From: Octopus bimaculoides
Taxonomy: Eukaryota
DNA: 41,733 bases
NCBI RefSeq assembly: GCF_001194135.2
Contig: NC_068997.1
Location: 29,996,670-30,038,402 of the forward strand
Direction of reading: 5' to 3'
Part shown: one piece after another, positions 1 to 26,813 of the stretch
Layout: each line of letters opens with the position of its first letter
How positions within the stretch are numbered: the stretch's first letter is position 1
Position numbers and translations under genes: made by a program
Notes under the pieces: generated by a model
The model's database searches: none
What the model saw: only the letters and a program-made list of their open reading frames with translations
What the model was told of the DNA's origin: nothing

Positions 1-337
1 AATGGAAAAACTTTCAAAATACAAAGACCTGGAAATAGAGATAACTCGAATGTGGAATCTAAAAACAGAAACAATTCCTATCATAGTAGGTGCCTTAGGT
101 ATAATAAAAAAATATTCAGACAAATACATAACAAAAACACCAGGACTTACAAATATATATAACATACAGAAAATTGCACTACTGGGTACTGCACACATTC
201 TACGCAAAACACTTTCAATACAGTAAACATAAGAGCACCACAGCAAACCACAGCACATACCCAAGGCGCACAGAGCTGCGCTCGGTAGTGAAGTGAAAGC
301 CCGTTATAAAAATAAAACTACTGAACAATAATAATAA
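1..337 (+). mobile_element. 3' end of R4/Dong-clade non-LTR retrotransposon (RLE endonuclease C-terminus, 3' UTR, (AAT)n tail)
   Basis: ORF 2-226 KYKDLEIEITRMW...IPIIVGALG...ALLGTAHILRKTL is the typical RLE-domain end; followed by short UTR and AATAATAATAA at ~327-337. Confidence 0.85.
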
Positions 338-338
338 C

Positions 339-530
339 AAGCTGGCAGAATCGTTTGAATACTTAGCGGTATTTTGTCTGCCGCTACGTTCTGAGTTCAA
401 ATTCTGCCGAGGCCGACTTTGTCCTTCATCCTTTCGGGGACGATTAAATAAGTACCAGTTATACACTGGGATCGATGTAATCGAATTAATCCCTATCCCC
501 AAATTTGAGGCCTTGTGCTTCCAGTGGAAA
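339..530 (+). mobile_element. Octopus-type tRNA-derived SINE, 5' truncated
   Basis: GCTGGCAGAATCG...GTTCTGAGTTCAAATTCTGCCGAGG (B-box-like)...AAGTACCAGTT...GGCCTTGTG; homologous copies at 6430-6610 and 20950-21262 on the minus strand. Confidence 0.8.
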
Positions 531-970
531 TTTGTCTAGTGGTTGTAGCGAAAGAGGTAGTATGGTGGACCCGTTTGAAAGGGCTAAAGCTCTCATCAAC
601 TTTTTCAAGTTTCATGTGAAAAGGAAATTGAGGGTGGAGAGGGAAGTGTTGCCTTGTAGTAAGTTTGTTGAAAGGAGGGTGAATGTTGGAAGAATGGCCA
701 GTGTGAAAAGACCAATTCTGATCGTGCACCTGTAAAAAATAAAAGGGAATTTAAGGAGAAGAGCTCTTTTCCTGTTGATCAGGCTTTTGTGGGGTTTTCC
801 ACGAGGACCTTAAAGCGCCTCTCTTATTGGGGGTTTAAATTGTGCAACTTTTTTGTTATTACATTGTATATATACGCGAAAACCCATTGTATCATCCTGT
901 TTTCGTCTTTAATGTTACATGTCGTTTAATGATTTGTATGTGAGCCCCTGTGACCATTAAAAGAATTAAC
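531..970 (+). mobile_element. 3' end of Tx1/L1-clade LINE (ORF2 C-terminus plus 3' UTR) followed by (ATT)n
   Basis: ORF 505-735 LINFFKFHVKRKLRVEREVL...KFVER resembles Tx1 ORF2 terminus; (TAT)n tract 971-997; related Tx1 pieces at 7430-8900 and 29768-30520. Confidence 0.6.
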
Positions 971-1141
971 TATTATTATTATTATTATTATTATTATTTC
1001 TTAACTCAATATTTATCATCTATTTATTATTATTATTCACTAATCCAATATAATAAAACGGTCCACTACAACCGGACACACCCGCCATTCTTACGAGAAA
1101 GAAAAGAAGAAAAAATTCATTTATCCATTTTCTTCTTTCAG

Positions 1142-1369
1142 GAAAATGCCCCTTGGATATAGTTGACAACGCTTTTCTCCCTGGTAACAATGATATTGAG
1201 ACGTCTGTTCTTAGTTATACGATGTGTTTCTATAGGTGTGAGGAAAAACCAAATTGTCAATCGTTTGACTACGGTATAAGTGATAGAAGATGCATTTTGT
1301 CAAGTAAAAATCATAATGATTCTGTTGCGTGGTATGGCGCACAAACACTTTACACTGAAATAAGCAGAG
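1142..1369 (+). CDS. Copy A internal exon: PAN/Apple domain (KCPLDIV...CFYRCEEKPNCQSFDY...RCILS...YTEISR)
   Basis: Pyrimidine tract + CAG acceptor ending 1141, GTAAGT donor at 1370; 228 nt, phase 1-1, open; C-x3-C-x5-C-x-x-F-x-Y...C PAN core; paralogous exon at 35158-35388. Confidence 0.9.
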
Positions 1370-2323
1370 GTAAGTGCAAAGTTGCTTTATATTTTATTGC
1401 ACTTTTAGTCATAGTTTAGGTAAACAATACTGCGGCCCCACCTTTAGCTGTTGTGTGTGTGCGTGCGCGCGCGCGCGTGTACTATATATATATANNNNNN
1501 NNNNNNNNNNNNNNNNNNNNNNNNNNNNNNNNNNNNNNNNNNNNNNNNNNNNNNNNNNNNNNNNNNNNNNNNNNNNNNNNNNNNNNNNNNNNNNNNNNNN
1601 NNNNNNNNNNNNNNNNNNNNNNNNNNNNNNNNNNNNNNNNNNNNNNNNNNNNNNNNNNNNNNNNNNNNNNNNNNNNNNNNNNNNNNNNNNNNNNNNNNNN
1701 NNNNNNNNNNNNNNNNNNNNNNNNNNNNNNNNNNNNNNNNNNNNNNNNNNNNNNNNNNNNNNNNNNNNNNNNNNNNNNNNNNNNNNNNNNNNNNNNNNNN
1801 NNNNNNNNNNNNNNNNNNNNNNNNNNNNNNNNNNNNNNNNNNNNNNNNNNNNNNNNNNNNNNNNNNNNNNNNNNNNNNNNNNNNNNNNNNNNNNNNNNNN
1901 NNNNNNNNNNNNNNNNNNNNNNNNNNNNNNNNNNNNNNNNNNNNNNNNNNNNNNNNNNNNNNNNNNNNNNNNNNNNNNNNNNNNNNNNNNNNNNNNNNNN
2001 NNNNNNNNNNNNNNNNNNNNNNNNNNNNNNNNNNNNNNNNNNNNNNNNNNNNNNNNNNNNNNNNNNNNNNNNNNNNNNNNNNNNNNNNNNNNNNNNNNNN
2101 NNNNNNNNNNNNNNNNNNNNNNNNNNNNNNNNNNNNNNNNNNNNNNNNNNNNNNNNNNNNNNNNNNNNNNNNNNNNNNNNNNNNNNNNNNNNNNNNNNNN
2201 NNNNNNNNNNNNNNNNNNNNNNNNNNNNNNNNNNNNNNNNNNNNNNNNNNNNNNNNNNNNNNNNNNNNNNNNNNNNNNNNNNNNNNNNNNNNNNNNNNNN
2301 NNNNNNNNNNNNNNNNNNNNNNC

Positions 2324-2910
2324 CTGTATAGTAATTCTCTTGCCCCAAATATAAACAACTATACAGCTGATCTGAGACGAGATAAGAGTTGGGGTACGGT
2401 TTCCCATAACGTACCGGTAAGTTGACTTACGGTCAATTCCAAGCAGATTCCAAACTCATGGCTGAAAAACAATAAAAGGCACTGTTATAACATCAAATTT
2501 AAACTAGGAGTCGTAGCAAACACAAAAGACCACGGTAATAGGGGAGCCTGCTGGGTATTTTGGTCCACCACCAACCGAGAAAAAAATGCTAAGACTAGGA
2601 GGAAACAGGAAGAGTAGCTACAAGTTGCTAAACGTAGCAAACACCGCCTCCGTAGGGGAGTCGTAAAGTGGTCTGAACGAGAAGAAGGTGAGTGTAAAAC
2701 TGCATATGATTTCATACTTTATTCCTCTGTACTGTCACTTTATCGTATTTCATGCGCAGAATCATACAATTGTCACCACAAAACCACTTTAACATATCAT
2801 TGAATAAATCTATGATGAAACATACTAAAATTATTGTTTTCCGCAAAATATCCTTGTAAAATGAGGATGCGTCTTATGTGAGGGCGCGTGCAATGCGACG
2901 GAAAATACGG
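2324..2910 (+). mobile_element. Internally deleted pogo-family (Passer-like) DNA transposon in the intron of copy A
   Basis: Near-identical to 16782-17143 joined to 18171-18393; remnant YNIKFKLGVV..DHGNR Brinker-like DNA-binding motif; right end ...GGAAAATACGG. Confidence 0.75.
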
Positions 2911-3131
2911 CATATATATATACATACACATATATATCGTATTTGTAATTAAATTTCATGGATGGGCTTTATGAATATTTTAATGCAGCGCTACGCGAGT
3001 TTCCACAAATCACGTATTACTTGTGATCATTGTCCGTATTCCGGAGATGATTACGGTATATTCCATAGTATGATCGACATCGGGTGGATCATAGTTTCTG
3101 CGTTCTTTCATCATTTTTTTTTCCATTTCAG

Positions 3132-3218
3132 AACTTTGGAATGATTTCAATCAGTCACATACATTGGAGGACATCAACGCCGCAGGATGTGCTTTCGGTT
3201 CCTATTTTATCCTTGATA
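3132..3218 (+). CDS. Copy A short linker exon (ELWNDFNQSHTLEDINAAGCAFGSYFILD)
   Basis: TTTTTTTTCCATTTCAG acceptor, GTAAGA donor, 87 nt phase 1-1, no stop; the B paralog keeps both splice sites and differs by an in-frame 9-nt indel. Confidence 0.8.
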
Positions 3219-3964
3219 GTAAGACCGTCATTTTTATTTAGTTGTTTATTTTTAGTGTTCTTTGATTCTGTGTCTTNNNNNNNNNNNNNNNNNNNNNNNN
3301 NNNNNNNNNNGTTCCTGATCTTTTACTCATCGATCTTCTGTCTCCAGTGCACGCCGAACAAAACTGAAGATTTTAAATATCTCTTTCTTCCGCAACGCAA
3401 AAGATAAAGAAATTTATAAATATCGCTTTCTTCTTCATCGCATGATTATTTCTACTTAGCGTCTTAATTTTTAGTTAAATAGATAATAAATAAATTAATA
3501 ATTAATAGTCTTGCAAAAAAGATGTAGTAAAACAAACACACAAGTACATTTAAAATCTGGCAGATGGGTTAATATTAATCCTCGTTGTCAATAAAAATCT
3601 CAACACGCTTCATTAATAACTTGTTCAAAAATACTCCAATACATCTCGCTGGTAATACGAGAATCTCTCTGCCTTCTAGATAACCAGCCACATACCCCTT
3701 CTCCCTCTCCCCTCATAATGCTATTTCACCAACCAAATTCCGCATAAATTATTATTCCCAATCCTTCCTTTCTAGATTATGCAACACTCAGGAACTCACT
3801 CCCTACTCACACTAACCTAAAGATTGCAAACGGAATATCCATAACATCGATCTATCGAATCAATAGACCACATCTATTCGTTTCCCTTGTACCTTGTCAA
3901 TGAAGAGCAATAATTTATGTTCTTATATCTCTTGTGTTCTCTCTTACATTTTTTTCTGTTGCAG

Positions 3965-4155
3965 AAAAAGAAATTAATGGCCAGACAACTTATTCAACTT
4001 TTTCCTTCAAACCAAATTCACATCACAACCTTGTAATCGAGGCCCAAGTGGACGCCCGCTCGGTCTTGGATTGTTCACGTTTATGTATGTTATCTTCTAC
4101 ATGTACCGCCTTTTCATATACTAACACTAAGTGCCTGCTAAAGAAACTGATCTGA
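3965..4155 (+). CDS. Copy A terminal exon: second PAN/Apple-like domain (KEINGQTTYSTF...CSRLCMLSSTCTAFSYTNTKCLLKKLI*)
   Basis: TTTTTCTGTTGCAG acceptor, phase 1, TGA 4153-4155, four-Cys PAN core, AATAAA at 4271. Confidence 0.88.
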
Positions 4156-4270
4156 ACTTCAATGGAATTCACTCCAAAATTATTTACTTCTCAATGAAAT
4201 GTGAGCAAGATTTCAACGGATCATGTTTGCATATAATAATTATATAAGATAAAAAGTGTGTTTCTTTGTG

Positions 4271-4276
4271 AATAAA
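4271..4276 (+). promoter_or_regulatory. Polyadenylation signal, copy A
   Basis: AATAAA ~115 nt after the stop codon, conserved in position in copies B and C. Confidence 0.6.
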
Positions 4277-5399
4277 ATATCAATTTAATTCAGATATTTA
4301 TTTTGTTAATTTATTTTCATTGCTAACGCTTTTCATTCTAAATTAGTCCAATCACACATTGGACGATTTATAAGATTATTAAATTTGCCTTGTAGCAATG
4401 AAGCAATTGGGCGTTATTTTATCGACCTTCAAAGAATGAAACACTAAGTTAACCTGGACAGCATTTGATTTCAAAACGTAACTGGTCTTAACTAAATGCC
4501 AGAAGCAGTTAAACCGAATCTTTAATGCTTCTTACCCATCATCTGAATAATATATGAGATAAAATAATTACATTTGATTGATTTCCCTTGAAAAGTGAAA
4601 TGATTTGTTATTCAAACTAAAAAAAGAAAAAAACCAAATTGAGGAAAGTAATATCGAAAACTTTTCTGAAGAATATGGTAAACAGTTTACGGGAATTATT
4701 GTACGCCCATTCCTATGTAAGAAAGCACCAAAAATCTTAGGTAATATGATTGTTAATTTGAGTTTTAGCTCTGGTCTCTCAGAAACTATTTAAGCTGGCT
4801 GATCTAAACTGTCTTTATCAAGGATTATAAAACCAAATTAAAATCGAATAGTGGAAAACGCGTCTGGAGAGGTGCATTAAATCCAGAAGTTACTCAATAT
4901 CCAAAGAATTTTTCACAGATAATATTGTCAAATTCTCGGTGAAGAACGCCTAAGAGCAGTTTAATTTTCGAAATGACTATTATTTCATGCAAAATTAATG
5001 TAAGTTTTAAGACTTAGTCAAGACTTAAGCTAGCAATTCTTAGATTACTGATGTCATAATATAGAGAAACCTTTTGTACAAAATATTCTGTCGCGTGACG
5101 CTAACGCACGGACGTAGCAGGAAATGTAGAACATGTTCTAAACTTAATCACGTGTTCATTCTCTTCAAACACTTGACCGAAAACATTCTGAGCATTGATC
5201 GTTTGGACATGTTCGGTCAACCGTATCAGCCTTAATTTACGGCGCTAAACATTGTCACTTGATCCCAACACGCACACGTAGTAGGGAACCTAAAGAAATT
5301 TCCAAGATATATATATATCCGTTTTTAAGGCCAGCCATGTGACTATCCTCTATCAATCAAATCCGATTCAAAGCGTATACTAATTTGAGTCATGAACTC

Positions 5400-6150
5400 G
5401 CCTATAAAAATAGGGGCAAGCTTCAAACACTAGTCAGTAGCAAGACAGCTGTAACATAGGCCACTTCTTTGTTTCAACTTTCTCATTACTGACACATAGG
5501 CAACGTGTTATATATTCCGGTACCGCAACAATTAGAGATATAAACCTGAATTTGTAATCGGGGTGGAGTAACAGTAAATTTCTCAATAATTCAGCGTAGG
5601 TATTCTCTTTTTTGCTGATCTTTATGTTAACGTCCGCTGGACAGCTAATTTCCACAACTGTACACAGTTTCTCCTCTCCATCCTAGTTCTATTATGCTTA
5701 AATTTTATTGAGGTTTTCACTGGGACATTCAATCAGTGCTCCTTATTATGAATGGCTATCGCCTCTACCAAACTGTGGATTCTTATTTCTTTGGGCTCAG
5801 GGTTATCCTTCCGACGGATCTTATTGTACAGTGTCTTAGTCACATCATATTACATATACCGCGATGACGTTTTCGAACGACTGCTTATGATGTGGGTAAT
5901 ATCATGGTGTTAACTCCAGAAAGTCTGCAGCAGTTATCATATTTTGGTATTTTACCTGCGTCTGTGAACCTTTTGTGCATCAAGCATTTGGCTGATACTT
6001 CATATTCTTGGATTGCAAAAACATAGCGTTTCATGTGAGAGTTTGTAGTCCGGTCGTTGGTCCATGGTAGATCGCTTTTATGAGCAATGTGCTATTGTTT
6101 TCGTTATCTACATTCCAACATGGAGCTCTGTATATTTGTTAGAAACAAGC
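5400..6150 (-). mobile_element. Degenerate RLE-type non-LTR retrotransposon fragment (zinc knuckle plus endonuclease)
   Basis: Minus-strand translation gives CCRL...DITHIISS knuckle remnant and EISCPADVNI...KENTYAELLRNL...YKFRFI; clade (NeSL/R2/R4-like) not resolved. Confidence 0.7.
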
Positions 6151-6429
6151 TCCTTTTTCAGAGGATGAATTTAAATGATTGAATACAGAAGAGACATAAT
6201 ACATACATGCATATATACATGCATACATACATACATACATACATACATACATGGATGCATGGATGGATGAACTGGGGACAATCGCTTAAATTGTATAACT
6301 GGTTCTTATTTTTTCCGCCCTGCTGGGATAAATGAGTCCAACCAAATTTGAAATCCAGACGTAGAGGAATGTGATAACGTGCATTAACTCATCGTTTCTA
6401 TCCATTCGCTGCCATTGTCACTCCGGTAT

Positions 6430-6610
6430 ATTGGTTTCAAAGGCCAGCAATTTCGAGGGAGAATTTAAGTCGATTACATGGACCCCACTGTTCAACTGGG
6501 ACTTATTTTTATCGACTCCTAAACAACAAATGGCCAAGTCGACCTTGGTGAAATTTGAACTCAGGAGGCAGAGACGAAAGAAATGCCTCTAAGTATTTTG
6601 TCCATCACAC
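6430..6610 (-). mobile_element. Degenerate SINE of the 339-530 family
   Basis: AGTCGATTACAT...AAGTCGACCTTGGTGAAATTTGAACTCAG is the reverse complement of the SINE core. Confidence 0.7.
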
Positions 6611-6929
6611 TAACGACCCTGCCAACACGTCACATTATTACTACAGTATATTAAAGAGTGTCGACTTGTTTTGCAGTATCTTGTTTTGATGTTACATTTA
6701 GGCGATGTTAATGTTAAACGCCCTTTGTTCAATATATTCATTTACAATGGTTTGTCATAAATCAACGAAGTGACTCTGTTTTTTTTCTATTTAATTGCGA
6801 TTAGCAAATATTCATTGATTAATTGATAACATTAATCAATTGGAAGGCTATTTATTATTCATTTGATAGCGATTTTATGAACAACAGTGTTGTTGGTTAC
6901 AAGGCTTTTAATAAAACTTTCAATAAAGA

Positions 6930-7011
6930 ACGAGAGAGAGAGAGTGACAGAGGGACAGAGAGAGAGAGAGAGAGAGAGTGAGAGAGAGAGAGTGAGAGAG
7001 AGAGAGAGAGA
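6930..7011. repeat. (GA)n microsatellite
   Basis: Direct reading. Confidence 0.95.
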
Positions 7012-7190
7012 AAGGCGTATCTGTACCTTTATACGTGTTCACTATAATCGTCGTATTTGTCATTTGTAAGTGCGTTTTGCTTTTGTCTTANNNNNNNNNN
7101 NNNNNNNNNNNNNNNNNNNNNNNNNNNNNNNNNNNNNNNNNNNNNNNNNNNNNNNNNNNNNNNNNNNNNNNNNNNNNNNNNNNNNNNNNN

Positions 7191-9959: not shown

Positions 9960-12900
9960 CACGATGTTATTTCTGACAACTATATCCGGCCTGTTGGCCT
10001 TAATTTCCCTGTGTGTATTGGCATATCCCATAGTATCGCTGCTTTCTCATTTCTGTGACCTATTCTGGCGTGTGCTTATGCCATCTTTGTTCTGTTGCTA
10101 TTTCATAGTGTGAATATATTCCTTCTTAGTCAAGATTGGGCAGCCAGAGACAATATGATTTATTGTTTCTTGTCCATCTCCACATATTCTGCAGTTACAT
10201 GTTATGTTTTTTTTTATGTGTTGGGTAATTTCTGTTGTGGGTGAGGGGCTTTGGTCTTGTGCTGCAATCAAAAGTCCAGTATTTATCATGAAGGGGCTTT
10301 TCTTGCCATCGTTTTATCATGATCCGTTGCTGTTCTAGTCTTAGTTTGGATTTCATTTGTTTTACAGCTTTTGTTGTTTCTTCTTTTTCTTCATAGTTGT
10401 TAGGTAGTATGACTTCATGTTTGTATTTGTCAGCTTCCTTAAAGACTGAAAACAGTTTTTTGTTTTGTTCATTTTTTGTGACTATTTGTATTAGTTTTCT
10501 TTGCTTCTGAAGTAGATATTTTTGCAGTCCTATGATGGTTATTTTGCAATAGTATTCTAGCTGTATAAGGCCTCTACCACCTTCTATACGTAGTATGTAT
10601 AATCATTCTATGTCAGATTTTGGGTGGTGCATCCTAAATCCTGTCATTATTTTCTTGTTTTCCATTATTTTTCTTGTTTTATTTTTCTTGTTTTTTTTAT
10701 TTTGATTACTTCATTTAGTGTCCAGTTAAGGATATTGTAGCTGTAACTTATAACTGGGTCGGCTAAAGTGTTGATACCTATTATCTTGTTTTTCACATTG
10801 AGCTCTGTTTTCAGTATTAATCTAACTCATCAATAGTATTCCTTTTTATCTTCTTTTTCATTTGTGTGTGTTGTATCGTACCTAGTTCATAGGTTCCTAA
10901 ATATTTATATGCCTGGCTTTTGTCTACTTCTCTTGTTTCATTAGCCTTATCTAGTGTGATGTTGCTACTCATAACTAGTTTTCCTCATTTGAAGAATGCT
11001 TTGGCACAATTTTTCTAAGCCAAATTTCATGTTTATTTCTATGGTAAATCCATGCTCTGCCTGTTGTAATGTTTCGAGGTGTTTACCATTTTTAGCGTAC
11101 AGTTTTAGGTCATCCATATATAAGAGGTAGGTGATTGTTTTACCGTAACAGTTGTATCCGCATCCAGTTCTGTTTATCATGTCAGATAAAGGTGTCAGTG
11201 CCAAGCAGAAAAGGAGTGGAGAGAGCGTGTCGCCCTGGAATATTTTTCTTCTAATGGGGATGGTATTGGTTTTTATGAGTCCCTCTTGTGTTTGGAGCTG
11301 TGGCACTGTCTGCCATTTATTCATAGAGTGATTAATATATTTTATGATTATTGTGCTACCTTGTTCATGGCTAGTGTTTCTAGGATCCATGTGTGGGGAA
11401 TACTATCAAAAGCCTTTCGATGCAGGCCATACTTAGACCTTTCTTCTTTCTGCGGCTGTCTTCAGTTATAGCTTTATTGAACACTAGTTGGTGTACCCGA
11501 TAATTCCCGGGAGTATAGATGTTCTATTGAAATGCCTTATTACTCTGATATAAGAAAGTAATTTCGTTATAATTTCTACAAAAAGTGTATTTTCCGTCAC
11601 GAAAAAGTACAAAAAACAGTCTGCTGGAGGAAGGAGAAAATTGACGAGAGAGGTCTTCGGAGGTTGGCGAGAAAGATTGTCGGATGTTGGTGAGAGAGGT
11701 TGTCGGAAGTTGGCGAGAGGCAAAGACATTATTCTGCTTAGGAGATGTATAACTGCTGTCATTCACAGAAATGAAGTCTTTAAGGTTTAAGATTCAAATG
11801 AAGGAAGTGCAATATTAACGTTTAGCAGTTCAAAACTGTGAGTAATGAAATGCAGAATCAGGTCGGCTAATCGTGAGAATCAGATATTGATCGCTTCGCT
11901 AAAATCTGCAGGTGGTATGGGTTATTTCCCTTGGGTTGTTTAAATAAAATATTAGTAATATGTAGAAGATAGAAGGATCCATTGGAAGTGCCCTATTATC
12001 GATTTTTTTCAGCAATCTAAGTATGTCAAGAGGTTTCCAGACATGAGTTCTACTCACGTGTCAAATAAAGTATAAAAGTGATATTGTCTGCAAAAATTAG
12101 AAATAGGACACACAAAAAATCAGTATTCAAAGTAATCGAACATGAACAATGAAATGAGTTATTTTCCTGGAGTGTTTAAAAACATATTGTACAGGTGCTA
12201 TGGGTTATACCCCTTAGGTGTTTAAAACATTAGTGATATGAGTCAGATAAAAAGGTCCCTTTCAGGGGCCGTATTATCGAATTTTCAACAATCTAAGTAT
12301 GTTACGAGGTTTCCAGACATGAGTTCTACTCACGTGTCAAGTTTCATCAAAATATGTTCTTGTCAGATATTTTAACCAGAAGTTGGGGATCTTATCAGGT
12401 GTTATCCAGTTATTTAGTTTGTGCCTGGGTGACCTCTTCAGTTGTTATAGGGGTCCAGAGTTGTTCAGGTGCTGAGTTCGTTGTTTTAATAGTCCTTTTC
12501 TGAGGTTGTTCCTTTGCCGACCATATTTCTTTCGAAAATTCTTCCACTTCTGCTGTTGGTGCTGCATTGGTATCTATTTTATTTTTGCCAAGCTGGAGTT
12601 AAACTGTTTGTTTTGTTCAAAGAAACGTTGGCGTTTCTCATACCGGCGGATCCTTTGTGCTTTGGTAAGGATATCTTGCTTTAGCTGTTCTTTTACCTCA
12701 AGTAAACCTATTTCTGTAATGTTGTATTTGCACAGTATTTTTGTTCTTTTCTTGTTGCTTAGTAGTGTTGATTGTCTACTAGTTTCGTTAAGGATTAACA
12801 GATCCTTTCTCTTGTTTTCTATTTTTTTCTGGATATTATTTATCCACAGGGTTTGTTTGGGTGGTGGTACTCCTGTTTGGATGGGTTTGAGGGAGTATCC

Positions 12901-14050
12901 AGCTTCATTTGTGACCACAGTGGCTGCTGCATATATTATGTCATTTAGTTCGGTGACATTGACATTTGTTTCTGTGGCTATTAGTTCTGTGGCGGCCAGG
13001 TTCATGCTATTTATAATTGACGCTGTTTTAGTATCAATTTTAATTTGTGGGAGGTACAATCGGTAGTCCATACTGAGATCTGTGGCTTTCAGTTCTTTGA
13101 TTATGCTCATTTTTAGAGTATCATAGTCATTAGGTTCCCCTTCAATGTTTCCAGGTTTTAGATTTGTTTTTCCTTCCTTCCCATTCATATGTTTGTCTGT
13201 GGTGTTCTGGTTTGGTGTCTTTTGCTCATCATTATACATTGCTACTGTCTGGGTTTGTTGTCTTCTGTTGTTTACTTCGCTTTTGTTGGAAATGTTACGT
13301 CTGTCTTTGTGTTTTACAGTCCCAGTGCTTATGATATTATTTGGCATTGATGTGTGGTTACTATCTACGTTTTCCTGATGTATTTTTCCTTTTAAGTGTT
13401 ATATTTCTATTTTTGATATTTTGTTTTGTTTTGAGAATATATATTCATATGTTAGCTAGTTTATTAGGGTTCATTGCTGTATCTAAGTCTTTATTTAGGT
13501 TATTTTTCTTCCGGGTTTCATATGTATATGTTGTGGTGTTTTCGTTCTTTGGGTAGAGCACTGCTCTAAAATATGCGTAGAGGATTGAAATATATTCCTC
13601 ACGTGTCCATTTATGCTTTTTTGATTTTACTTGCGCGACATGCGGCCCTTTATTCTGACGGTCATCATTTTCGTAGGGCCCGTTCATTCCTGGTGTTAAA
13701 TTGTTTTGCATATGTAGTTTTTCGTACTTTTTGTGTAACAAGCTTAAAGTACGTACTTCCCGAATATTATTCTTGGGTTGAATAATACCGGTATTATCTA
13801 ATCTATTAAAAAAATTAGCACATGGTGTTTGGGAAAGGAGATGATCTGGTGCTGATGGGATCGTAATGTGGCGGGTGTGTTTACATGTACTGTGAGAGCA
13901 GTGGAGATGATATACAGTTAAAATACATAATTTCATTTGGAAAATAGAAATAAATTTCATTGAGTATTACTTACTCGGATATAGTCTAACCCTTTGTCAG
14001 CTATTTTTAGTTCCATGTGATGTCTTTATTCCCGATGTTTTTGGAGAGAT
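9960..14050 (-). mobile_element. Near full-length degenerate R4/Dong-clade LINE, interrupted at 11473-12353
   Basis: N-terminal KKHKWTREE..MNPNKLAN (13445-13960); RT FQGDTLSPLLFCLAL..LYMDDLKLY (10965-11390); knuckle CRICGDGQETINHIVSGC (10098-10289); ANRPDIVV near 9970-10000. Confidence 0.9.
11473..12353. mobile_element. Non-coding insertion with internal repeats, possibly a non-autonomous Helitron/Helentron-like element
   Basis: Interrupts the LINE RT region; starts ACTAG..ACCCG..CCCGGG like 37584; contains 3 x 23-bp repeat (11646-11714) and ~155-bp direct repeats (~11908-12065, ~12190-12345). Confidence 0.4.
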
Positions 14051-14108: not shown

Positions 14109-14947
14109 NNNNNNNNNNNNNNNNNNNNNNNNNNNNNNNNNNNNNNNNNNNNNNNNNNNNNNNNNNNNNNNNNNNNNNNNNNNNNNNNNNNNNNNNNNNN
14201 NNNNNNNNNNNNNNNNNNNNNNNNNNNNNNNNNNNNNNNNNNNNNNNNNNNNNNNNNNNNNNNNNNNNNNNNNNNNNNNNNNNNNNNNNNNNNNNNNNNN
14301 NNNNNNNNNNNNNNNNNNNNNNNNNNNNNNNNNNNNNNNNNNNNNNNNNNNNNNNNNNNNNNNNNNNNNNNNNNNNNNNNNNNNNNNNNNNNNNNNNNNN
14401 NNNNNNNNNNNNNNNNNNNNNNNNNNNNNNNNNNNNNNNNNNNNNNNNNNNNNNNNNNNNNNNNNNNNNNNNNNNNNNNNNNNNNNNNNNNNNNNNNNNN
14501 NNNNNNNNNNNNNNNNNNNNNNNNNNNNNNNNNNNNNNNNNNNNNNNNNNNNNNNNNNNNNNNNNNNNNNNNNNNNNNNNNNNNNNNNNNNNNNNNNNNN
14601 NNNNNNNNNNNNNNNNNNNNNNNNNNNNNNNNNNNNNNNNNNNNNNNNNNNNNNNNNNNNNNNNNNNNNNNNNNNNNNNNNNNNNNNNNNNNNNNNNNNN
14701 NNNNNNNNNNNNNNNNNNNNNNNNNNNNNNNNNNNNNNNNNNNNNNNNNNNNNNNNNNNNNNNNNNNNNNNNNNNNNNNNNNNNNNNNNNNNNNNNNNNN
14801 NNNNNNNNNNNNNNNNNNNNNNNNNNNNNNNNNNNNNNNNNNNNNNNNNNNNNNNNNNNNNNNNNNNNNNNNNNNNNNNNNNNNNNNNNNNNNNNNNNNN
14901 NNNNNNNNNNNNNNNNNNNNNNNNNNNNNNNNNNNNNNNNNNNNNNN

Positions 14948-14988
<41 letters not shown>

Positions 14989-14991
14989 GTA

Positions 14992-15863
14992 CAGCGTGTC
15001 CCAAAAGTCACTATACACTTTCTTTCTTCTATTTCGTTTCAGGTATCATTCGGAGAGACATGAGGCCATCAACATTTAACATCATAGGCTTTGCAGTTTT
15101 TGTAATTGTATCATTTCCTTGCCCCATGGCACACCATACCATCAGCTTTGGAGAGTCTGGTTCATGTTCGAGAATTTCTGCTAGCTTTGATTTTCCCCAA
15201 ATTCAACAATTGTGTTGGTTTACCCGACCAGAGAGATGAAAGATAGACGCATCGCTGAACCATACGTTTTCTAAGAACTGAGAGTCGTTTTGGTAATGGT
15301 AGAGGAGTGATTAACACATTTCCAGACCACGAGCATCATAATCTTCCGCTTGAAGTCTTTGAAGAACCTCATGTTAGTATAGACAGAGCTTTATCACTCT
15401 CTGAAGCATCTACTGAATCAAGCTTTTGTTGATGCTAAGTTCCAGTGCAGTCCTCCTGATGAATTTCCTCTGGCTTTTAGTGAACGCCTGCATCAGAAGT
15501 TCGGTGTTGTTATCAATGGTAGTAGTAGAAGGCGTTCCGCTTCGTGGTTTGTCAAGAACATATCCTTTTTCGAGAAAATTGCTACGGATAGCATAAATTG
15601 TGCTACGCGTTAGAGCAGCATGACGGCCATGAACTCTCTCAAACGTGCGATGAACCACAGTAGGGGACTGACAAAATTCCTGCCAGGCAGTAATTTTGCA
15701 ACGTTGCTCTAACGTCAATTGGCAAGCCATGGTCAAGGGAATGATACACTTACAAAAACTGCAAAGCCTAAGGTGTCAAATGCTAATGGCCTCACGTCAC
15801 TCCAAATGATAACTGAAACGAAATAGAAAGAAGAAAGCTTATAATGACTTTTGGGACACCCTG
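14992..15863 (-). mobile_element. Internally deleted Tc1/mariner-superfamily transposon with ~139-bp TIRs
   Basis: TIRs 14992-15130 and 15726-15863 (CAG.GTGTCCCAAAAGTCA); inserted in (TA)n; HTH ORF 15410-15736 with KPRSG.P motif (DUF4817-like N-terminus). Confidence 0.88.
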
Positions 15864-16781
15864 CATATATATNNNNNNNNNNNNNNNNNNNNNNNNNNNN
15901 NNNNNNNNNNNNNNNNNNNNNNNNNNNNNNNNNNNNNNNNNNNNNNNNNNNNNNNNNNNNNNNNNNNNNNNNNNNNNNNNNNNNNNNNNNNNNNNNNNNN
16001 NNNNNNNNNNNNNNNNNNNNNNNNNNNNNNNNNNNNNNNNNNNNNNNNNNNNNNNNNNNNNNNNNNNNNNNNNNNNNNNNNNNNNNNNNNNNNNNNNNNN
16101 NNNNNNNNNNNNNNNNNNNNNNNNNNNNNNNNNNNNNNNNNNNNNNNNNNNNNNNNNNNNNNNNNNNNNNNNNNNNNNNNNNNNNNNNNNNNNNNNNNNN
16201 NNNNNNNNNNNNNNNNNNNNNNNNNNNNNNNNNNNNNNNNNNNNNNNNNNNNNNNNNNNNNNNNNNNNNNNNNNNNNNNNNNNNNNNNNNNNNNNNNNNN
16301 NNNNNNNNNNNNNNNNNNNNNNNNNNNNNNNNNNNNNNNNNNNNNNNNNNNNNNNNNNNNNNNNNNNNNNNNNNNNNNNNNNNNNNNNNNNNNNNNNNNN
16401 NNNNNNNNNNNNNNNNNNNNNNNNNNNNNNNNNNNNNNNNNNNNNNNNNNNNNNNNNNNNNNNNNNNNNNNNNNNNNNNNNNNNNNNNNNNNNNNNNNNN
16501 NNNNNNNNNNNNNNNNNNNNNNNNNNNNNNNNNNNNNNNNNNNNNNNNNNNNNNNNNNNNNNNNNNNNNNNNNNNNNNNNNNNNNNNNNNNNNNNNNNNN
16601 NNNNNNNNNNNNNNNNNNNNNNNNNNNNNNNNNNNNNNNNNNNNNNNNNNNNNNNNNNNNNNNNNNNNNNNNNNNNNNNNNNNNNNNNNNNNNNNNNNNN
16701 NNNNNNNNNNNNNNNNNNNNNNNNNNNNNNNNNNNNNNNNNNNNNNNNNNNNNNNNNNNNNNNNNNNNNNNNNNNNNNNNN

Positions 16782-18393
16782 TATAGTAATTCTCTTGCCC
16801 CAAATATAAACAACCATACAGCTGATCTGAGACGAGATAAGAGTTGGGGTACGGTTTCCCATAACGTACCGGTAAGTTGACTTACGGTCAATTCCAAGCA
16901 GATTCCAAGCACATGGCTGAAAAACAATAAAATGCACTGTTATAACATCAAATTTAAACTAGGAGTCGTAGCAAACACAAAAGACCACGGTAATAGGGGA
17001 GCCTGCTGGGTATTTTGGTCCACCACCAACCGAGAAAAAAAAATGCTAAGACTAGGAGGAAACAGGAAGAGTAGCTACAAGTTGCTAAACGTAGTAAACA
17101 CCGCCACCGTAGGGGAGTCGTAAAGTGGTCTGAACGAGAAGAAGAATTAAAAACATGGGTTTTAGACCAAAGAAAATCGAGCTTTTCAGTATCCACTAAA
17201 ATGATTATGTACCGTTCAAGACTTATAGCAATGCACAGAGATATCAACGATTTTAAAGGGTAAACATCACGATGTTCCATGTCCTTTGAATAGGAAGATC
17301 AAATACTTAAGTTTCATAGGTACGCCATCTGTGCAAGAAAGCAAGTTAATTTGGAACTTTCACAGATAGTGAATATGGCCGAAAGCTGTGACATTTGATG
17401 TGCCATCAAACAAGGCAGTAGAAACCAAGGGGTGCTAAAGCTCTGACTGTTAAATTATGTGGCTAGGAAAAGACACGCTACGCAGTTGTATTATCATGCT
17501 GCGCTGATGGGACGAACATTTCACCTTTTTTAATTTTTAAAAGAAAGACATAGCCTTAAAAAAGGATTCCCAATGGTATTTATGTTCATGTCCATCGAAA
17601 AGGTCGGAAGGATGAGGGAGGAATGAAATCCTGACTTGATAAAGAGTGGTCCTGGCGTCCTGGTGGACTGTTAAAGAAACCTGCTTTATTAGTTTGAGAC
17701 CAGTTTCGAGCTCATAGAACTGAGTATGTTAAGAGAAAACTTGGAGAACTGAAGACCCAGTTAGCTACAGTCCCAGCCTAACCAACTATAATTCTGGGAG
17801 GCCTAACCAGTGGTAATTCCAGGTGGCCTAACCAGTCTTTAAATGTTTCAGTCAATAAAAAAAAACCTAAAAGATTCCTACGGGTGGGGTGGAGCAAGTG
17901 GATTCAGTCTTCAGATTTTGAAGTAACACCAACAGGAAGAAGGAAGAGGCCTAATATTACACAGGTGTGTGATTGGGTAGAAAGTTCATGGAATGGTGTA
18001 AAAGAAGAGGATGCTGTGAAACTACTTTAAAAAATCTGGCATTAGTAATGCCCTTGATTGGTTTCTCCCAGTTTTTATCTGTATATTTGCTTTTTGTTTG
18101 CATGGATCAGGATTCATTAATACCAATATTTCTCTTTCGTTATGGCAAATTAATTTAGTTTCCTTTAAAGGTGAGTGTAAAGCTGCATATGATTTCATAC
18201 TTTATTCCTCTGTACTGTCACATTATTGTATTTCATGTGCAGAATCATGCAGTTATCCCCACAAAACCACTTTAAAGTATCTTTCAATAGATCTGTGATG
18301 AAACATACTAAAATTGTTGTTTTCTGAAAAATATCCTTGGAAAATAGGGATGCGTCTTATGTGAAGGTGCGTGCAATGCGACGGAAAATACGG
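16782..18393 (+). mobile_element. Degenerate pogo-family (Passer-like) DNA transposon upstream of copy C
   Basis: Brinker-like FKLGVV..HGNR, CENP-B-like KWSE..ELK.WVLDQR, DDE remnants (RPGGLLKKP, DQFRAH); right TIR ...GGAAAATACGG at 18393; left end probably in the gap. Confidence 0.8.
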
Positions 18394-18418
18394 CATATAT
18401 ATATACATATACATACTT

Positions 18419-18455
<37 letters not shown>

Positions 18456-18505
18456 CACGCACACATACACACACATACATACACACATGCATACGCACAC
18501 ATACA

Positions 18506-18545
<40 letters not shown>

Positions 18546-18764
18546 TACACACACACAAACCTATATAGATCGTATTAGCAATTATATTTCATGGATGGGC
18601 TTTATGAATATTTTAATGCAGCGCTACGCGAGTTTCCACAAATCACGTATTACTTGTGATCATTGTCCGTATTCCGGAGATGATTACGGTATATTCCATA
18701 GTATGATCGACATCGGGTGGATCATAGTTTCTGCGTTCTTTCATCATTTCTTTTTCCATTTCAG

Positions 18765-18851
18765 AACTTTGGAATGATTTCAATCAGTCACATACATTGG
18801 AGGACATCAACGCCGCAGGATGTGCTTTCGGTTCCTATTTTATCCTTGATA
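18765..18851 (+). CDS. Copy C linker exon, identical in sequence to the copy A linker exon
   Basis: Same CAG acceptor and GTAAGA donor, 87 nt, phase 1-1. Confidence 0.75.
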
Positions 18852-19571
18852 GTAAGACCGTCATTTTTATTTAGTTGTTTATTTTTAGTGTTCTTTGATT
18901 CTGTGTCTTGTTCCTGATCTTTAATTCACCGATCTTCTGTCTCCAGTGCACGCACATCGAACAAAACTGAAGATTTTAAATATCTCTTTCTTCTGCAACG
19001 CAAAAGATAAAGAAATTTATAAATATCGCTTTCTTCTTCATCGCATGATTATTTCTACTTAGCGTCTTAATTTTTAGTTAAATAGATAATAAATAAATTA
19101 ATAATTAATAGTCTTGCAAAAAAGATGTAGTAAAACAAACACACAAGTACATTTAAAATCTGGCAGATGGGTTAATATTAATCCTCGTTGTCAATAAAAA
19201 TCTCAACACGCTTCATTAATAACTTGTTCAAAAATACCCCAATACATCTCGCTGGTAATACGAGAACCTCTCTACCTCAAAGATAACCAGCCACATGCCC
19301 CTTCTCCTTCTCCCCTCATATATGCAATTTCACTAGCCAGATCCTGCATTAATTATTATTCCCAATCCTTCCTTTCTAGATTAGGCAACACTCAGTAACT
19401 TCCTAATCTTTAGCAAACCTAAAGATTCCAAACGGAACATTCATAACATCAATCTACCGAATCAGTAGACCATATCTATTCTTTCGCGTTTTACGTTGTC
19501 AGTCTAGAGCAATAATTTATTTCGTTCTTATATTTATTGTGTTTCCTCTTTCAATTTCTTTTCTGTTGCAG

Positions 19572-19762
19572 AAAAAGAGATTAATGATCTGACAGCTTAT
19601 TCAACTTTTTCCTTCAAACAAAATCCATATCTCTACCTTCAAACCGAGGCCCAAATGGATGCTCACTCGGTTCTGGATTGTTCACGGTTATGTATGATAT
19701 CTTCTACATGTATCGCCTTTTCATATACTAACACTAAGTGCTTACTAAAGAAACTGACCTGA
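19572..19762 (+). CDS. Copy C terminal PAN-like exon (KEINDLTAYSTF...CSRLCMISSTCIAFSYTNTKCLLKKLT*); absent from the ORF track
   Basis: TTTTCTGTTGCAG acceptor, 191 nt like A and B, open frame, four Cys, TGA 19760-19762. Confidence 0.8.
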
Positions 19763-19881: not shown

Positions 19882-20949
19882 ATCAATTTAATTCAGATAA
19901 TTATTTTGTTAATTTATATTTATTACTAACGTTTTTCCTTTCAAATTAGTCTCTCTTATACATCCATTCACACATTTGAAGGTTTATAAGATTAGTAAAT
20001 TTACCCAAGTAACTCTGGAGAACTTAGGTTTTATCTAATCGACCTTCAAAAAATGAAACATAAAGTTAACNNNNNNNNNNNNNNNNNNNNNNNNNNNNNN
20101 NNNNNNNNNNNNNNNNNNNNNNNNNNNNNNNNNNNNNNNNNNNNNNNNNNNNNNNNNNNNNNNNNNNNNNNNNNNNNNNNNNNNNNNNNNNNNNNNNNNN
20201 NNNNNNNNNNNNNNNNNNNNNNNNNNNNNNNNNNNNNNNNNNNNNNNNNNNNNNNNNNNNNNNNNNNNNNNNNNNNNNNNNNNNNNNNNNNNNNNNNNNN
20301 NNNNNNNNNNNNNNNNNNNNNNNNNNNNNNNNNNNNNNNNNNNNNNNNNNNNNNNNNNNNNNNNNNNNNNNNNNNNNNNNNNNNNNNNNNNNNNNNNNNN
20401 NNNNNNNNNNNNNNNNNNNNNNNNNNNNNNNNNNNNNNNNNNNNNNNNNNNNNNNNNNNNNNNNNNNNNNNNNNNNNNNNNNNNNNNNNNNNNNNNNNNN
20501 NNNNNNNNNNNNNNNNNNNNNNNNNNNNNNNNNNNNNNNNNNNNNNNNNNNNNNNNNNNNNNNNNNNNNNNNNNNNNNNNNNNNNNNNNNNNNNNNNNNN
20601 NNNNNNNNNNNNNNNNNNNNNNNNNNNNNNNNNNNNNNNNNNNNNNNNNNNNNNNNNNNNNNNNNNNNNNNNNNNNNNNNNNNNNNNNNNNNNNNNNNNN
20701 NNNNNNNNNNNNNNNNNNNNNNNNNNNNNNNNNNNNNNNNNNNNNNNNNNNNNNNNNNNNNNNNNNNNNNNNNNNNNNNNNNNNNNNNNNNNNNNNNNNN
20801 NNNNNNNNNNNNNNNNNNNNNNNNNNNNNNNNNNNNNNNNNNNNNNNNNNNNNNNNNNNNNNNNNNNNNNNNNNNNNNNNNNNTGATTAATTTCTCTTGA
20901 AAAGTGACACTATTTGAAATTTAAAGTAAAAAATATTCTATTCTACTCT

Positions 20950-21262
20950 AGACACAAGGCCTGAAATTTTGGGGGAGGTGAGGGCACTCGATTAGATCAA
21001 TCCCAGTACGTAACTGGTACTTAATTTATAGACTCCGAGAGGATTAAAGGCAAAGTCGACCTCGGCCAAATTTGAACTCAGAACGTAAAGGCAGACGAAA
21101 TACGTTAAGCATTTCGCCGGCTTGCTAACGTTTCTTATTTCTTTATTGCCCACAAGGGGCTAAATATAAAGGGGACAAACAAGGACAGACAAAGAAATTA
21201 AGACGATTACATCGACCTAAGCATATCACCCCCGCATGCTAACGTTTCTGCCTGATCGCCAC
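20950..21262 (-). mobile_element. Two adjacent SINE copies with different 3' tails
   Basis: 20950-21134 has the GGCCTTGTG tail; 21135-21262 has the AGCCCCTTGTGGGCAATAAAGAAATAA tail and an internal deletion; absent from the homologous flanks of A and B. Confidence 0.8.
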
Positions 21263-25330: not shown

Positions 25331-26692
25331 GTTTTCACTTCACGACACGTATTTAGTCGTGACTGCTTTTAATTTTCCGTGAGCAAGTGAAGCACAAATA
25401 TTTCTATTACGTTTGTCTATGAAAGTTTGTGCTCCCGTCTTCTCTAAACAAGTTTTAATACGAATCAAGTCTTTAGCAGAGATATTACGAATTTTCACTG
25501 CTGTGACTACAGAAACAGAACTGATATCCATTTACATTTAACTTCTTATGTCAAACGAAACTAACGTTTTGTGGCCTCCAATTAAATAACAGATCAGTGA
25601 AGTTATTAAGGTGAATCAGCTGACTCGAGAGAAACCTAATCTGCAAGACAATCTTAGCAGCATTTGAAGGTCTCAGCGGCTAGTGAGAGTGTTGGAAGCC
25701 GGTTGAAAATTCAAACCGTCATTCTTAGATTGAACCACAATTGCTTAGAGTTCCGACACTGATTTTCGGTATAAAATGGTGATATCATGATGAGCCTCTC
25801 TTATGTTACTCCCTAAATTCCCAGATTCTGAATATTGTTTGTCTCACATTTATAGCAGACGCATTTCAACTGAATTTGGACACCCTGAACACAGAATGCC
25901 ACTGTGTAAAGAGTCTCATTGCATGGACTCATCATAACTTATAACAGATGCTGCTAAGTTTTTATTTATTTTTGAATTTTCAATTACATTGAGAAGTTGA
26001 CTTTAAATTTGATCTAATAATTTAAGACTGAAAATATTATCTATGAAAAATCTTTGCCCGTATTTTTTTAAACTAAAACTGTGAAGGCTTCAACAGAAAG
26101 ATTGGGTCGCCATTGCTCCAGAACATTAATCCTCTGAAATTCAATCTCTGATCACATTTTCTTTATACAAATCTTCAAACGAAATATTAACCGTATCGAT
26201 CTCACCAATCGATAAAGAGTTGCAAACATCATGAAAGCAAAATATCGCCCAAAGAGAACGAAATTTTTTTAATTTTAATTTCACTTTATAATCCTTGATA
26301 AAGACAGTTTAGATCAGCCAGCTTAAATAGTTTCTGAGAGACCAGAGCTAAAACTCAAATTAACAATCATATTACCTAAGATTTTTGGTGCTTTCTTACA
26401 TAGGAATGGACGTACAATAATTCCCGTAAACTGTTTACCATATTCTTCAGAAAAGTTTTCGATATTACTTTCCTCAATTTGGTTTTTCTCTTTTTTTAGT
26501 TTGAATAACAAATCATTTCACTTTTCAAGGAAATCAATCAAATGTAATTATTTTATCTCATATATTATTCAGATGATGNNNNNNNNNNNNNNNNNNNNNN
26601 NNNNNNNNNNNNNNNNNNNNNNNNNNNNNNNNNNNNNNNNNNNNNNNNNNNNNNNNNNNNNNNNNNNNNNNNNNNNNNTGAATTAAATTGAT

Positions 26693-26698
26693 TTTATT
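26693..26698 (-). promoter_or_regulatory. Polyadenylation signal, copy B
   Basis: TTTATT on plus, position homologous to A and C. Confidence 0.55.
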
Positions 26699-26813
26699 AG
26701 TAAAGAAACACACATTTTATCTGATATCATTATTATTAGCAAACGTGATCCTTTGAAGTCTTGCTCACATTTCATTGAGAAGTAAATAATTTTCAGGTGA
26801 ATTCCATTAAAGT

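What the first reader, a model, noticed from the sequence alone, without database searches (positions are those of the whole stretch)
2324..4845. Copy A is a chimera: C-like upstream, B-like downstream
From 2324 to ~3660 A is nearly identical to C, sharing the pogo insertion and an identical linker exon, while B is clearly diverged there. From ~3780-3910 A matches B much better than C. At 4535-4840 A differs from B (26280-26578) at only ~3 sites in ~290 bp, versus roughly 80% identity to C. The relationship switches inside the last intron. This suggests gene conversion or unequal exchange reassorting exon modules among paralogs, including across orientations.
Basis: partly seen in the sequence, partly recalled or inferred. 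Interest (0 to 1): 0.72.

Follow-up and report, generated by a model that had tools for sequence, protein, structure and literature searches.

The report
Mosaic copy of octopus PAN-domain gene
One of three neighbouring copies of a small octopus PAN/Apple-domain gene is a patchwork whose front is almost identical to one sister copy and whose tail to another. This is the ordinary footprint of gene conversion between duplicated genes, seen here in a gap-ridden short-read assembly that cannot fully vouch for it.

Summary
Copy A (2323-4844) is 98-99.7% identical to copy C up to about 3634. It switches inside the last intron (3635-3675) and is 99% identical to inverted copy B at 4537-4831 (triplet permutation p<=5e-5). 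The 34-N gap at 3277-3310 is intronic, and its flanks abut directly in copy C, so its true length is about 0.

The 'C front / B back' picture is too simple. The A=C tract contains a 90% island at 2688-2952. A's middle (3661-4292) is only about 91% like B. A's last exon is not B-derived. The 99% B-like tract lies beyond the poly(A) signal. That gives at least three switches, so a single crossover is rejected.

A fourth O. bimaculoides paralog and two O. vulgaris copies give strongly discordant trees per segment. Paralogs cluster by species in the distal intron, also in the gap-free O. vulgaris assembly.

Best reading: repeated short-tract interlocus gene conversion (concerted evolution) in a PAN/Apple gene family. 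This mechanism is well known and has already been invoked for cephalopod gene clusters. Contig-level misassembly cannot be excluded without reads. Low to moderate interest.

The parts
1141..1368 (+). N-terminal PAN-like exon of copy A, upstream of the finding and separated from it by gap 1495-2322
   Evidence: tblastn with O. vulgaris exon-1 peptide and P0003, E 2.6e-12 and 7.9e-10. B's counterpart is 35389-35159 (-). None was found for C.
2323..2687 (+). A=C block 1: the 5' fragment of a decayed pogo/Tigger-type element in intron 1, 98.3% identical to C 16782-17144. Both contigs start here at a gap edge.
   Evidence: Element identity comes from the DDE_1 hit on the adjoining C-only segment.
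2688..2952 (+). Island of about 90% A-C identity (27 substitutions). It is bounded on the left by the 1,023-bp indel (C 17145-18167) and on the right by a microsatellite that is about 130-150 bp longer in C.
2953..3634 (+). A=C block 2: 5 substitutions and a 4-bp indel in 648 read bases (99.2%). It contains the linker exon and the assembly gap, and 3392-3634 is identical over 243 bp.
3132..3218 (+). Linker exon (87 nt, ..ELWNDFNQSHTLEDINAAGCAFGSYFILD.), identical in A and C (18765-18851). B's version (about 29035-28938, -) differs in sequence and has a 9-nt insertion.
   Evidence: Splice sites and phase were read from the sequence.
3277..3310 (.). Assembly gap (34 N) in intron 2. The flanks abut directly in C and in all other copies, so the true length is about 0.
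3547..3660 (+). Segment highly conserved in all four O. bimaculoides copies (94-99% pairwise). It is part of a ~140-bp element with an extra copy at 29605-29744. The A=C tract ends at its distal edge.
3635..3675 (+). Switch zone from C-like to non-C-like, inside gap-free contig 3311-7090 and inside the last intron
3661..3964 (+). Distal intron 2. A groups with B and D (A-B 90.8%, A-D 90.1%, A-C 83.0%). Here paralogs cluster by species.
3965..4155 (+). Last coding exon (PAN/Apple module, stop TGA at 4153-4155). A's version is its own lineage, nearest to O. vulgaris V2 (bootstrap 97), and is not a copy of B or C.
   Evidence: Pfam PAN_1 24.3 bits against a cut-off of 21.4
4156..4536 (+). 3' UTR (AATAAA at 4271-4276) and proximal flank, with mixed relationships. 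B is unread from the equivalent of 4293 to 4536 (gap 26579-26678), so the left end of the A=B tract is hidden there.
4537..4831 (+). A=B tract: 2 substitutions and a 1-bp indel in 295 bp against B 26578-26285 (-). It is intergenic.
4832..4844 (+). End of collinear homology: 3 clustered substitutions, then a breakpoint. Homology to D and V2 resumes at 4928-5069, so A has a 1.4-1.7 kb deletion here rather than the end of the duplicated unit.
16782..19238 (+). Partner tract in copy C, including the C-only pogo DDE core at 17145-18167
26272..26578 (-). Partner tract in copy B. It ends exactly at the 100-N gap and lies in the same gap-free contig (20884-26578) as the 3' flanks of B and C.

Best explanation
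A, B and C are three paralogs of a small octopus gene with three known exons: an N-terminal PAN exon, a linker exon and a C-terminal PAN/Apple exon. A is an older paralog whose sequence has been overwritten piecemeal by homologous, non-reciprocal exchange with its sisters, that is, interlocus gene conversion.

There are at least two young events (about 1% divergence). One is with C, covering at least 1.3 kb of intron 1, the linker exon and proximal intron 2. That tract is split into two blocks by a stretch bounded by two large length differences. The other is with B, covering 0.3-0.55 kb of 3' intergenic flank. An older event brought A's distal intron 2 close to the B/D lineage (about 90%).

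Shown here: the tracts, their bounds, their statistical support, the discordant trees, and species-wise clustering of paralogs. Inferred: that the mechanism is gene conversion, and that the tracts are a few million years old. The age comes from scaling about 1% divergence against 6-12% between the D and V2 orthologs, which split about 34 Mya. The direction of transfer could not be determined.

The only coding consequence is that A and C carry the same linker exon joined to clearly different last exons.
For: 1. The switch is highly non-random, and it lies inside a gap-free contig.
2. Tracts are bounded on both sides. A-B jumps from 91.5% to 98-99% (Fisher p=1.2e-5). The A=C tract cannot extend far upstream, because A 1-1494 has no match near C.
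3. The joins are in perfect homologous register, as homologous recombination would give.
4. Tract ends coincide with length differences: the 1,023-bp indel, the microsatellite length difference, and A's deletion at 4844.
5. Segment trees conflict with 93-100% bootstrap support.
6. The same process shows up independently of A. B-D is 95-99% at A-coordinates 3547-4155 but 81% in the flanks, above the D-V2 ortholog identity. Quartets give D,B|V2,V3 at 22:0:2 in distal intron 2, against D,V2 orthology at 8:0:1 and 12:1:1 in the flanks. V2 and V3 come from a gap-free long-read assembly.
7. A's private differences inside the C-like tract (3324, 3326, the 4-bp indel) carry the state found in B or V2. 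They are real paralog variants, not read errors or copies of C reads.
8. Gene conversion has already been proposed for cephalopod gene clusters (PMC9068888).
Against: The contigs come from a short-read shotgun assembly that was later scaffolded with Hi-C (PMC9068888; about 3.3 kb per contig, PMC10700109).

- The A and C contigs both begin at the same homologous base, next to gaps.
- The B tract stops exactly at a 100-N gap, so its left boundary is unseen.
- Contig 2323-3276 is a 954-bp piece placed only by scaffolding.
- No reads, depth data or second assembly of this species could be examined.
- Unsampled paralogs may be the true partners.
- Non-reciprocity, the defining property of conversion, cannot be tested from one genome.
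- That the window is O. bimaculoides is inferred from gap style and from 95-99% tracts shared with L001. It was not shown directly.
Confidence: 0.66

Rival explanations
1. Assembly artefact. The near-identical stretches are C-derived or B-derived (or allelic) sequence wrongly built into or scaffolded into A's locus by the de Bruijn assembler, gap closer or scaffolder, so the real A is not mosaic.
For: The assembly is a fragmented short-read one. A's and C's contigs start at the same homologous position beside gaps. There is a spurious ~0-bp gap at 3277-3310. B's tract ends at a 100-N join. The switch at 3635-3675 sits next to a 243-bp stretch identical in A and C, inside an element that is 94-99% alike in all copies, which is a place where paths could be swapped.
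Against: The tracts are not identical copies. A has private variants on both sides of the identical stretch, and these carry paralog states. The 90% island is far too diverged for alleles. Swapping A's and C's left halves would not remove the pattern, because both halves exist and are 98-99% alike. Removing the A=B tract would need two chimeric joins with no long shared k-mer at 4832-4844. Apart from the tracts, scaffold piece 1-7090 has no >=95% match elsewhere in the window, so it is not a haplotig. The same kind of mosaic occurs in the gap-free O. vulgaris loci.
Confidence: 0.16
2. A single unequal crossover (NAHR) between a C-like and a B-like parent created A as a hybrid gene, which has since diverged.
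For: The overall pattern is C-like at the 5' end and non-C-like at the 3' end, with a seamless junction in a conserved element.
Against: Identity to B is not uniform downstream: 91.5% and then 98-99% (p=1.2e-5). A's last exon groups with V2, not B. Identity to C does not continue upstream into 1-1494. The A=C tract has an internal 90% island. As scaffolded, B is inverted relative to C, so a simple crossover would invert the interval rather than make a hybrid.
Confidence: 0.06
3. A was assembled in one complex replicative event (template switching of the FoSTeS/MMBIR type, or nested partial duplications) that copied pieces from C, from B and from a third, unsampled paralog.
For: There are several donors and short pieces. 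A's middle segment has no near-identical partner among the six copies examined. A also has a nearby 1.4-1.7 kb deletion.
Against: All junctions are in exact homologous register, with no microhomology-type insertions or filler. Pieces differ in age (about 1% against about 9%). The family shows the same patchwork between other pairs and in another species, which fits a recurrent process better than a single event.
Confidence: 0.08
4. There was no exchange. The pattern reflects uneven substitution rates or selective constraint along the gene.
For: The exon and the 114-bp element are more conserved in all pairs.
Against: Constraint raises identity for all pairs alike. It cannot change which copy is nearest, nor produce 93-100% bootstrap conflicts or clustering of paralogs by species.
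Confidence: 0.02

Closest known systems
Interlocus (non-allelic) gene conversion and concerted evolution in duplicated gene families (textbook cases: primate gamma-globin genes, opsin arrays; from general knowledge)
   Same: Discrete tracts of near-identity, a few hundred bp to about 2 kb long, bounded by older divergence. Tract-versus-flank tree conflict. Paralogs within a species more alike than orthologs. Tract ends at length differences.
   Different: Non-reciprocity and direction were not tested. The evidence comes from one draft genome. At least one partner (D) is probably megabases away, and one (B) is inverted as scaffolded.
Homogenization by gene conversion proposed for cephalopod protocadherin clusters (Albertin et al. 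2022, PMC9068888)
   Same: Same animals, same inference: species-specific sub-families despite orthologous chromosomes.
   Different: That case rests on gene-tree patterns across large arrays. Here individual tracts and breakpoints are resolved in a small PAN/Apple family, mostly in non-coding sequence.
Hybrid genes made by unequal crossing-over (e.g. Lepore-type globin fusions, red-green opsin hybrids; from general knowledge)
   Same: The 5' part comes from one paralog and the 3' part from another lineage, with a seamless homologous junction.
   Different: There are at least three switches, tracts of unequal age, and no extension of identity into the flanks.
Paralog collapse or chimeric contigs in short-read assemblies
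   Same: Contig breaks and gaps fall at the edges of near-identical paralogous sequence.
   Different: The tracts carry private paralog-type variants and a diverged island, and the pattern recurs in a long-read assembly of a sister species.

Membership tests
Interlocus gene conversion tract | A discrete stretch of elevated identity between paralogs, bounded on both sides by clearly lower identity | tested here: met
   A=C is bounded at 3635-3675 and somewhere upstream of 2323, since there is no match in 1-1494. A=B is bounded between 4293 and 4536 on the left and at 4832-4844 on the right..
Interlocus gene conversion tract | Phylogenetic conflict between tract and flanks | tested here: met
   Bootstrapped NJ trees per segment and quartet counts.
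Interlocus gene conversion tract | Non-reciprocal transfer: donor unchanged, acceptor overwritten | not testable with these tools
   This needs pre-event haplotypes, population data or a close outgroup for each copy. Direction could not be polarised with D, V2 or V3.
Interlocus gene conversion tract | Both partners exist as separate physical loci, not as an assembly duplicate | tested here: inconclusive
   Private variants, indels and the 90% island argue for separate loci. No reads or second assembly of this species were available.
Unequal-crossover hybrid gene | A single breakpoint, with uniform identity to each parent on its side continuing into the flanks | tested here: not met
   There are at least three switches, A-B goes from 91.5% to 98-99% (p=1.2e-5), and there is no upstream continuation.
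PAN/Apple domain (Pfam PF00024 PAN_1) | Profile match above Pfam's gathering score | tested here: met
   A scores 24.3 bits and B 23.6 bits against a cut-off of 21.4, on the last exon. Database relatives are named 'Apple domain-containing protein'.
pogo/Tigger-type DDE transposon | DDE_1 transposase domain | tested here: met
   C 17145-18167, with frameshifts bridged, scores 37 bits against a cut-off of 22. A lacks this core and keeps only the 5' ~360 bp.
pogo/Tigger-type DDE transposon | Terminal inverted repeats and TA target-site duplication | not tested
   The 5' end is lost in the gaps 1495-2322 and 15873-16781.
mariner-type transposon (insertion in B, D and V2) | Transposase_1 / HTH_48 domains above threshold | tested here: inconclusive
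   Only a weak Transposase_1 match, E 0.11 and 12.9 bits against a cut-off of 24. The element is decayed.

The most novel reading that the evidence does not exclude
Exchange among these PAN/Apple paralogs is not just neutral homogenisation but a recurrent way of recombining a shared linker or N-terminal part with divergent C-terminal PAN modules. It would operate between copies that are inverted and up to about 3 Mb apart, generating diversity in a lineage-restricted octopus secreted-protein family.
Probability: 0.05. Interest if true: 0.5.

Novelty: new member of a known kind. Interest (0 to 1): 0.25.

Why it matters
If real, it is a cleanly resolved example of ongoing concerted evolution in a cephalopod gene family, with individual tracts, breakpoints and barriers visible. 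It supports at base-pair level what has been inferred from gene trees for cephalopod gene clusters. In practice it warns that orthology and duplication dating in this family, and in similar octopus families, will be wrong if whole genes are treated as single units. It also marks a locus where the O. bimaculoides short-read contigs need long-read validation. It does not reveal a new mechanism.

Tried and rejected
- a MAFFT global three-way alignment misaligned B upstream of its 1.28-kb insertion. I replaced it with a TE-trimmed six-copy alignment.
- I first took some BLAST hits for a second O. vulgaris copy 'V1' in L002. /data/L002.fa actually holds both L002 and L003, so 'V1' was V3. Corrected.
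- L003 was not exported as its own file, so I passed it through DNA alignment.
- four-taxon counts for A, B, C, D at 3661-3964 favour AC|BD only because B and D are near-identical. They say nothing about A's affinity, so I used six-taxon trees instead.
- Rfam and tRNA scans of the region found nothing above threshold. The hits at 6192-6270 lie on a microsatellite.
- the protein search found only three relatives, and none is encoded by the window. A, B and C are therefore unannotated, and I could not find the window's position in the public assembly by protein look-up.
- I could not retrieve the 2015 O. bimaculoides genome paper, so I do not cite its heterozygosity value.
- I rejected a young TE inserted independently in A and B as the cause of the 99% tract, because C, D, V2 and V3 all carry homologous sequence at the same position.
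- I rejected a haplotig, because apart from the tracts 1-7090 has no high-identity partner in the window.
Full report
**What the window is.** The window is 41.7 kb of AT-rich animal sequence (about 38% G+C), broken by 11 runs of N. It is rich in (CA)n microsatellites and decayed transposons.

The finding concerns the 3' part of a small gene present three times. A is at 2323-4844 (+). C is at 16782 to about 23242 (+). B is on the minus strand, from 35389 down to about 23489.

The gene has three exons:
- An N-terminal PAN-like exon: A 1141-1368, B 35389-35159, not found for C.
- An 87-nt linker exon: A 3132-3218.
- A last exon: A 3965-4155, with stop at 4153-4155.

The last exon passes Pfam's PAN_1 gathering score, at 24.3 bits against 21.4. 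The only database relatives are 'Apple domain-containing' proteins of Octopus bimaculoides and O. vulgaris.

The window's gap style matches that of the O. bimaculoides locus L001, and it shares 95-99% tracts with L001. That points to O. bimaculoides, but this is an inference. That assembly is the 2015 short-read shotgun assembly re-scaffolded with Hi-C (PMC9068888). It has about 3.3 kb per contig (PMC10700109).

**The gap.** In C the two flanks of A's gap 3277-3310 are directly adjacent, and the other copies also have nothing between them. The flanks are therefore collinear and the true gap is about 0 bp. It sits in intron 2, so no reading frame is involved.

A break with no missing sequence comes right after 324 bp that are nearly identical in A and C, and right before three A/C differences. 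That is what a k-mer assembler does when two real copies share a long identical stretch. This last point is an inference.

A against C:

| A coordinates | A-C differences |
|---|---|
| 2327-2687 | 98.3% identical |
| 2688-2952 | about 90% (27 substitutions) |
| 2953-3276 | 1 substitution |
| 3311-3634 | 4 substitutions and a 4-bp indel |

The linker exon is identical in A and C. C has an extra 1,023 bp (17145-18167) that matches the pogo-type DDE_1 domain, and a longer microsatellite. B is 75-83% identical to both A and C in this region.

After 3635 the A-C differences pile up. At 3661-3964, A-B is 90.8% and A-C is 83.0%. At 4537-4831, A and B differ by 2 substitutions and one 1-bp indel, followed by three adjacent changes at 4832-4834. 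A-C there is about 82%.

The order of informative sites is 69:4 (C-type to B-type) left of 3628-3675 and 27:144 right of it, with permutation p<=5e-5. A GENECONV-style test singles out A-C, A-B and B-D, each at p<=2e-4. The main switch lies within the gap-free contig 3311-7090 and within the last intron.

**It is more than a two-part chimera.**
- A's identity to B is 91.5% over 3547-4292 and 98-99% over 4537-4844 (Fisher p=1.2e-5).
- The A=C tract is interrupted by a 265-bp island of about 90% identity. The island starts exactly at the 1,023-bp indel and ends at the microsatellite length difference.
- A's last exon is not B's. It is 92-93% identical to B, D and V2, and 87% to C.
- The 99% B-like tract lies beyond the poly(A) signal at 4271-4276, so it carries no exon.
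- Homology does not truly end at 4844. A 4928-5069 matches sequence 1.4-1.7 kb further downstream in D and V2, so A has a deletion there.

**Other copies.** D (L001, O. bimaculoides) and V2 (L002, O. vulgaris) are orthologs, at 86% over 4.4 kb with shared flanks and a shared 1.28-kb intron insertion. V3 (L003, O. vulgaris) is C's ortholog by its last exon and 3' flank.

Segment trees conflict strongly:

| A coordinates | Best-supported groupings (bootstrap %) |
|---|---|
| 3100-3660 | (A,C) 99-100 |
| 3661-3964 | (B,D) 99; (A,B,D) 97; (V2,V3) 91 |
| 3965-4155 (last exon) | (A,V2) 97; (C,V3) 87 |
| 4640-4844 | (A,B) 93; (C,V3) 100; (D,V2) 100 |

Quartet counts tell the same story. In distal intron 2, same-species paralogs pair up (D,B|V2,V3 at 22:0:2). 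In the flanks the orthologs pair up (8:0:1 and 12:1:1). B and D are 95-99% alike across A-coordinates 3547-4155 but 81% outside it, which exceeds the D-V2 ortholog identity there.

This is concerted evolution. Part of the evidence comes from the gap-free, long-read O. vulgaris assembly, so it does not depend on the draft contigs.

**Mechanism.** The best explanation is repeated short-tract interlocus gene conversion on an older paralog A. Four observations fit it:
- The junctions are in exact homologous register.
- The tracts are bounded on both sides.
- The tracts have different ages.
- Three tract ends coincide with large length differences, which are known barriers to heteroduplex extension (general knowledge).

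The D-V2 orthologs are 6-12% diverged and split about 34 Mya (PMC10700109). Scaling the young tracts' roughly 1% divergence against that puts them at a few million years old. This is an inference that assumes a clock. Direction of transfer is unresolved.

**Rivals.** Misassembly is the serious rival. Contigs start and stop at the edges of the tracts, and B's tract abuts a 100-N join. Against it:
- The tracts carry private variants that show paralog states (3324, 3326 and the 4-bp indel have the B or V2 state).
- The 90% island is too diverged for alleles.
- Swapping A's and C's near-identical halves would not remove the pattern.
- Removing the A=B tract would need two chimeric joins without long shared k-mers.

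A single unequal crossover is rejected by the non-uniform identities and by the lack of upstream continuation. A one-off multi-template event is possible but less economical, given that the same patchwork appears in other pairs and in the other species. Rate heterogeneity cannot change which copy is nearest.

**Orientation.** The 3' flanks of C (+) and B (-) lie tail to tail within one gap-free contig, 20884-26578, so that inversion is solid. A's orientation relative to them depends on the 100-N join at 7091-7190, so 'across orientations' is not secure for the A-B exchange.

**Novelty.** Gene conversion between duplicated genes is textbook, and it has already been proposed for cephalopod clusters (PMC9068888). 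This is a new and rather well-resolved instance in an unstudied PAN/Apple family, mostly affecting non-coding sequence, and it still needs read-level confirmation.

Noticed in passing
window 27437-26815 (-) vs L001 13092-13714: B and the distant O. bimaculoides paralog D are 95-99% identical across distal intron 2 and the last exon, but about 81% in the flanks. That is higher than the D-V2 ortholog identity, so this is a further exchange tract that does not involve A.
   Followed up: yes
L002 about 25831-26700 and L003 about 12515-13140: O. vulgaris copies V2 and V3, 3 Mb apart in a gap-free assembly, cluster together in distal intron 2 (bootstrap 91). Their flanks are orthologous to D and C respectively. 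So there is concerted evolution in the sister species too.
   Followed up: yes
window 22937-23242 vs L001 15731-16035: C and D are 95.4% identical over 305 bp of 3' flank, against 88-89% for either one versus V2. The stretch starts at a 291-bp deletion in D. It may be a further tract, or just a conserved piece.
   Followed up: partly
window 20884-26578: The 3' flanks of C (+) and B (-) lie tail to tail in one gap-free contig and meet at about 23242-23489. This is an inverted duplication of the gene unit.
   Followed up: partly
window 27438-28719 (-); also L001 about 11835-13091 and L002 about 24572-25830: A 1.28-kb insertion with decayed transposase-like ORFs (weak Transposase_1 hit, E 0.11) sits at the same intron-2 site in B, D and V2, but not in A, C or V3. 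It is older than the split between the two species and marks two sub-lineages of the family.
   Followed up: partly
window 4845-5069: A's homology to D and V2 resumes at 4928-5069 (about 80%) after skipping 1.4-1.7 kb that B, C, D and V2 all have. So 4844 is a deletion breakpoint in A, not the end of the duplicated unit.
   Followed up: partly
window 14109-16781: C's N-terminal PAN exon was not found. The space upstream of C is taken up by two gaps and an ~890-bp element with ~150-bp inverted ends (14981-15130 and 15726-15872).
   Followed up: no
window 29605-29744: There is an extra copy, 84-89% identical, of the ~140-bp element that lies at the A=C tract end (A 3586-3724, B 27256-27398). It sits in B's intron 1. 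The element may be a small repeat family.
   Followed up: no
window 3965-4155, 19572-19762, 27005-26815: The last exons differ mostly by amino-acid-changing substitutions in their first half (A vs B: 9 of 62 residues). The four cysteines and the C-terminal half are conserved. No dN/dS was computed.
   Followed up: no
window 10965-13347 (-): ORFs resembling a reverse transcriptase (YMDD motif), probably a LINE fragment between A and C. Not checked against Pfam.
   Followed up: no
window 6192-6270 (-): Rfam matches to mir-297, mir-1277 and mir-3149, far below gathering scores, on a TG/TA microsatellite. These are chance matches.
   Followed up: yes
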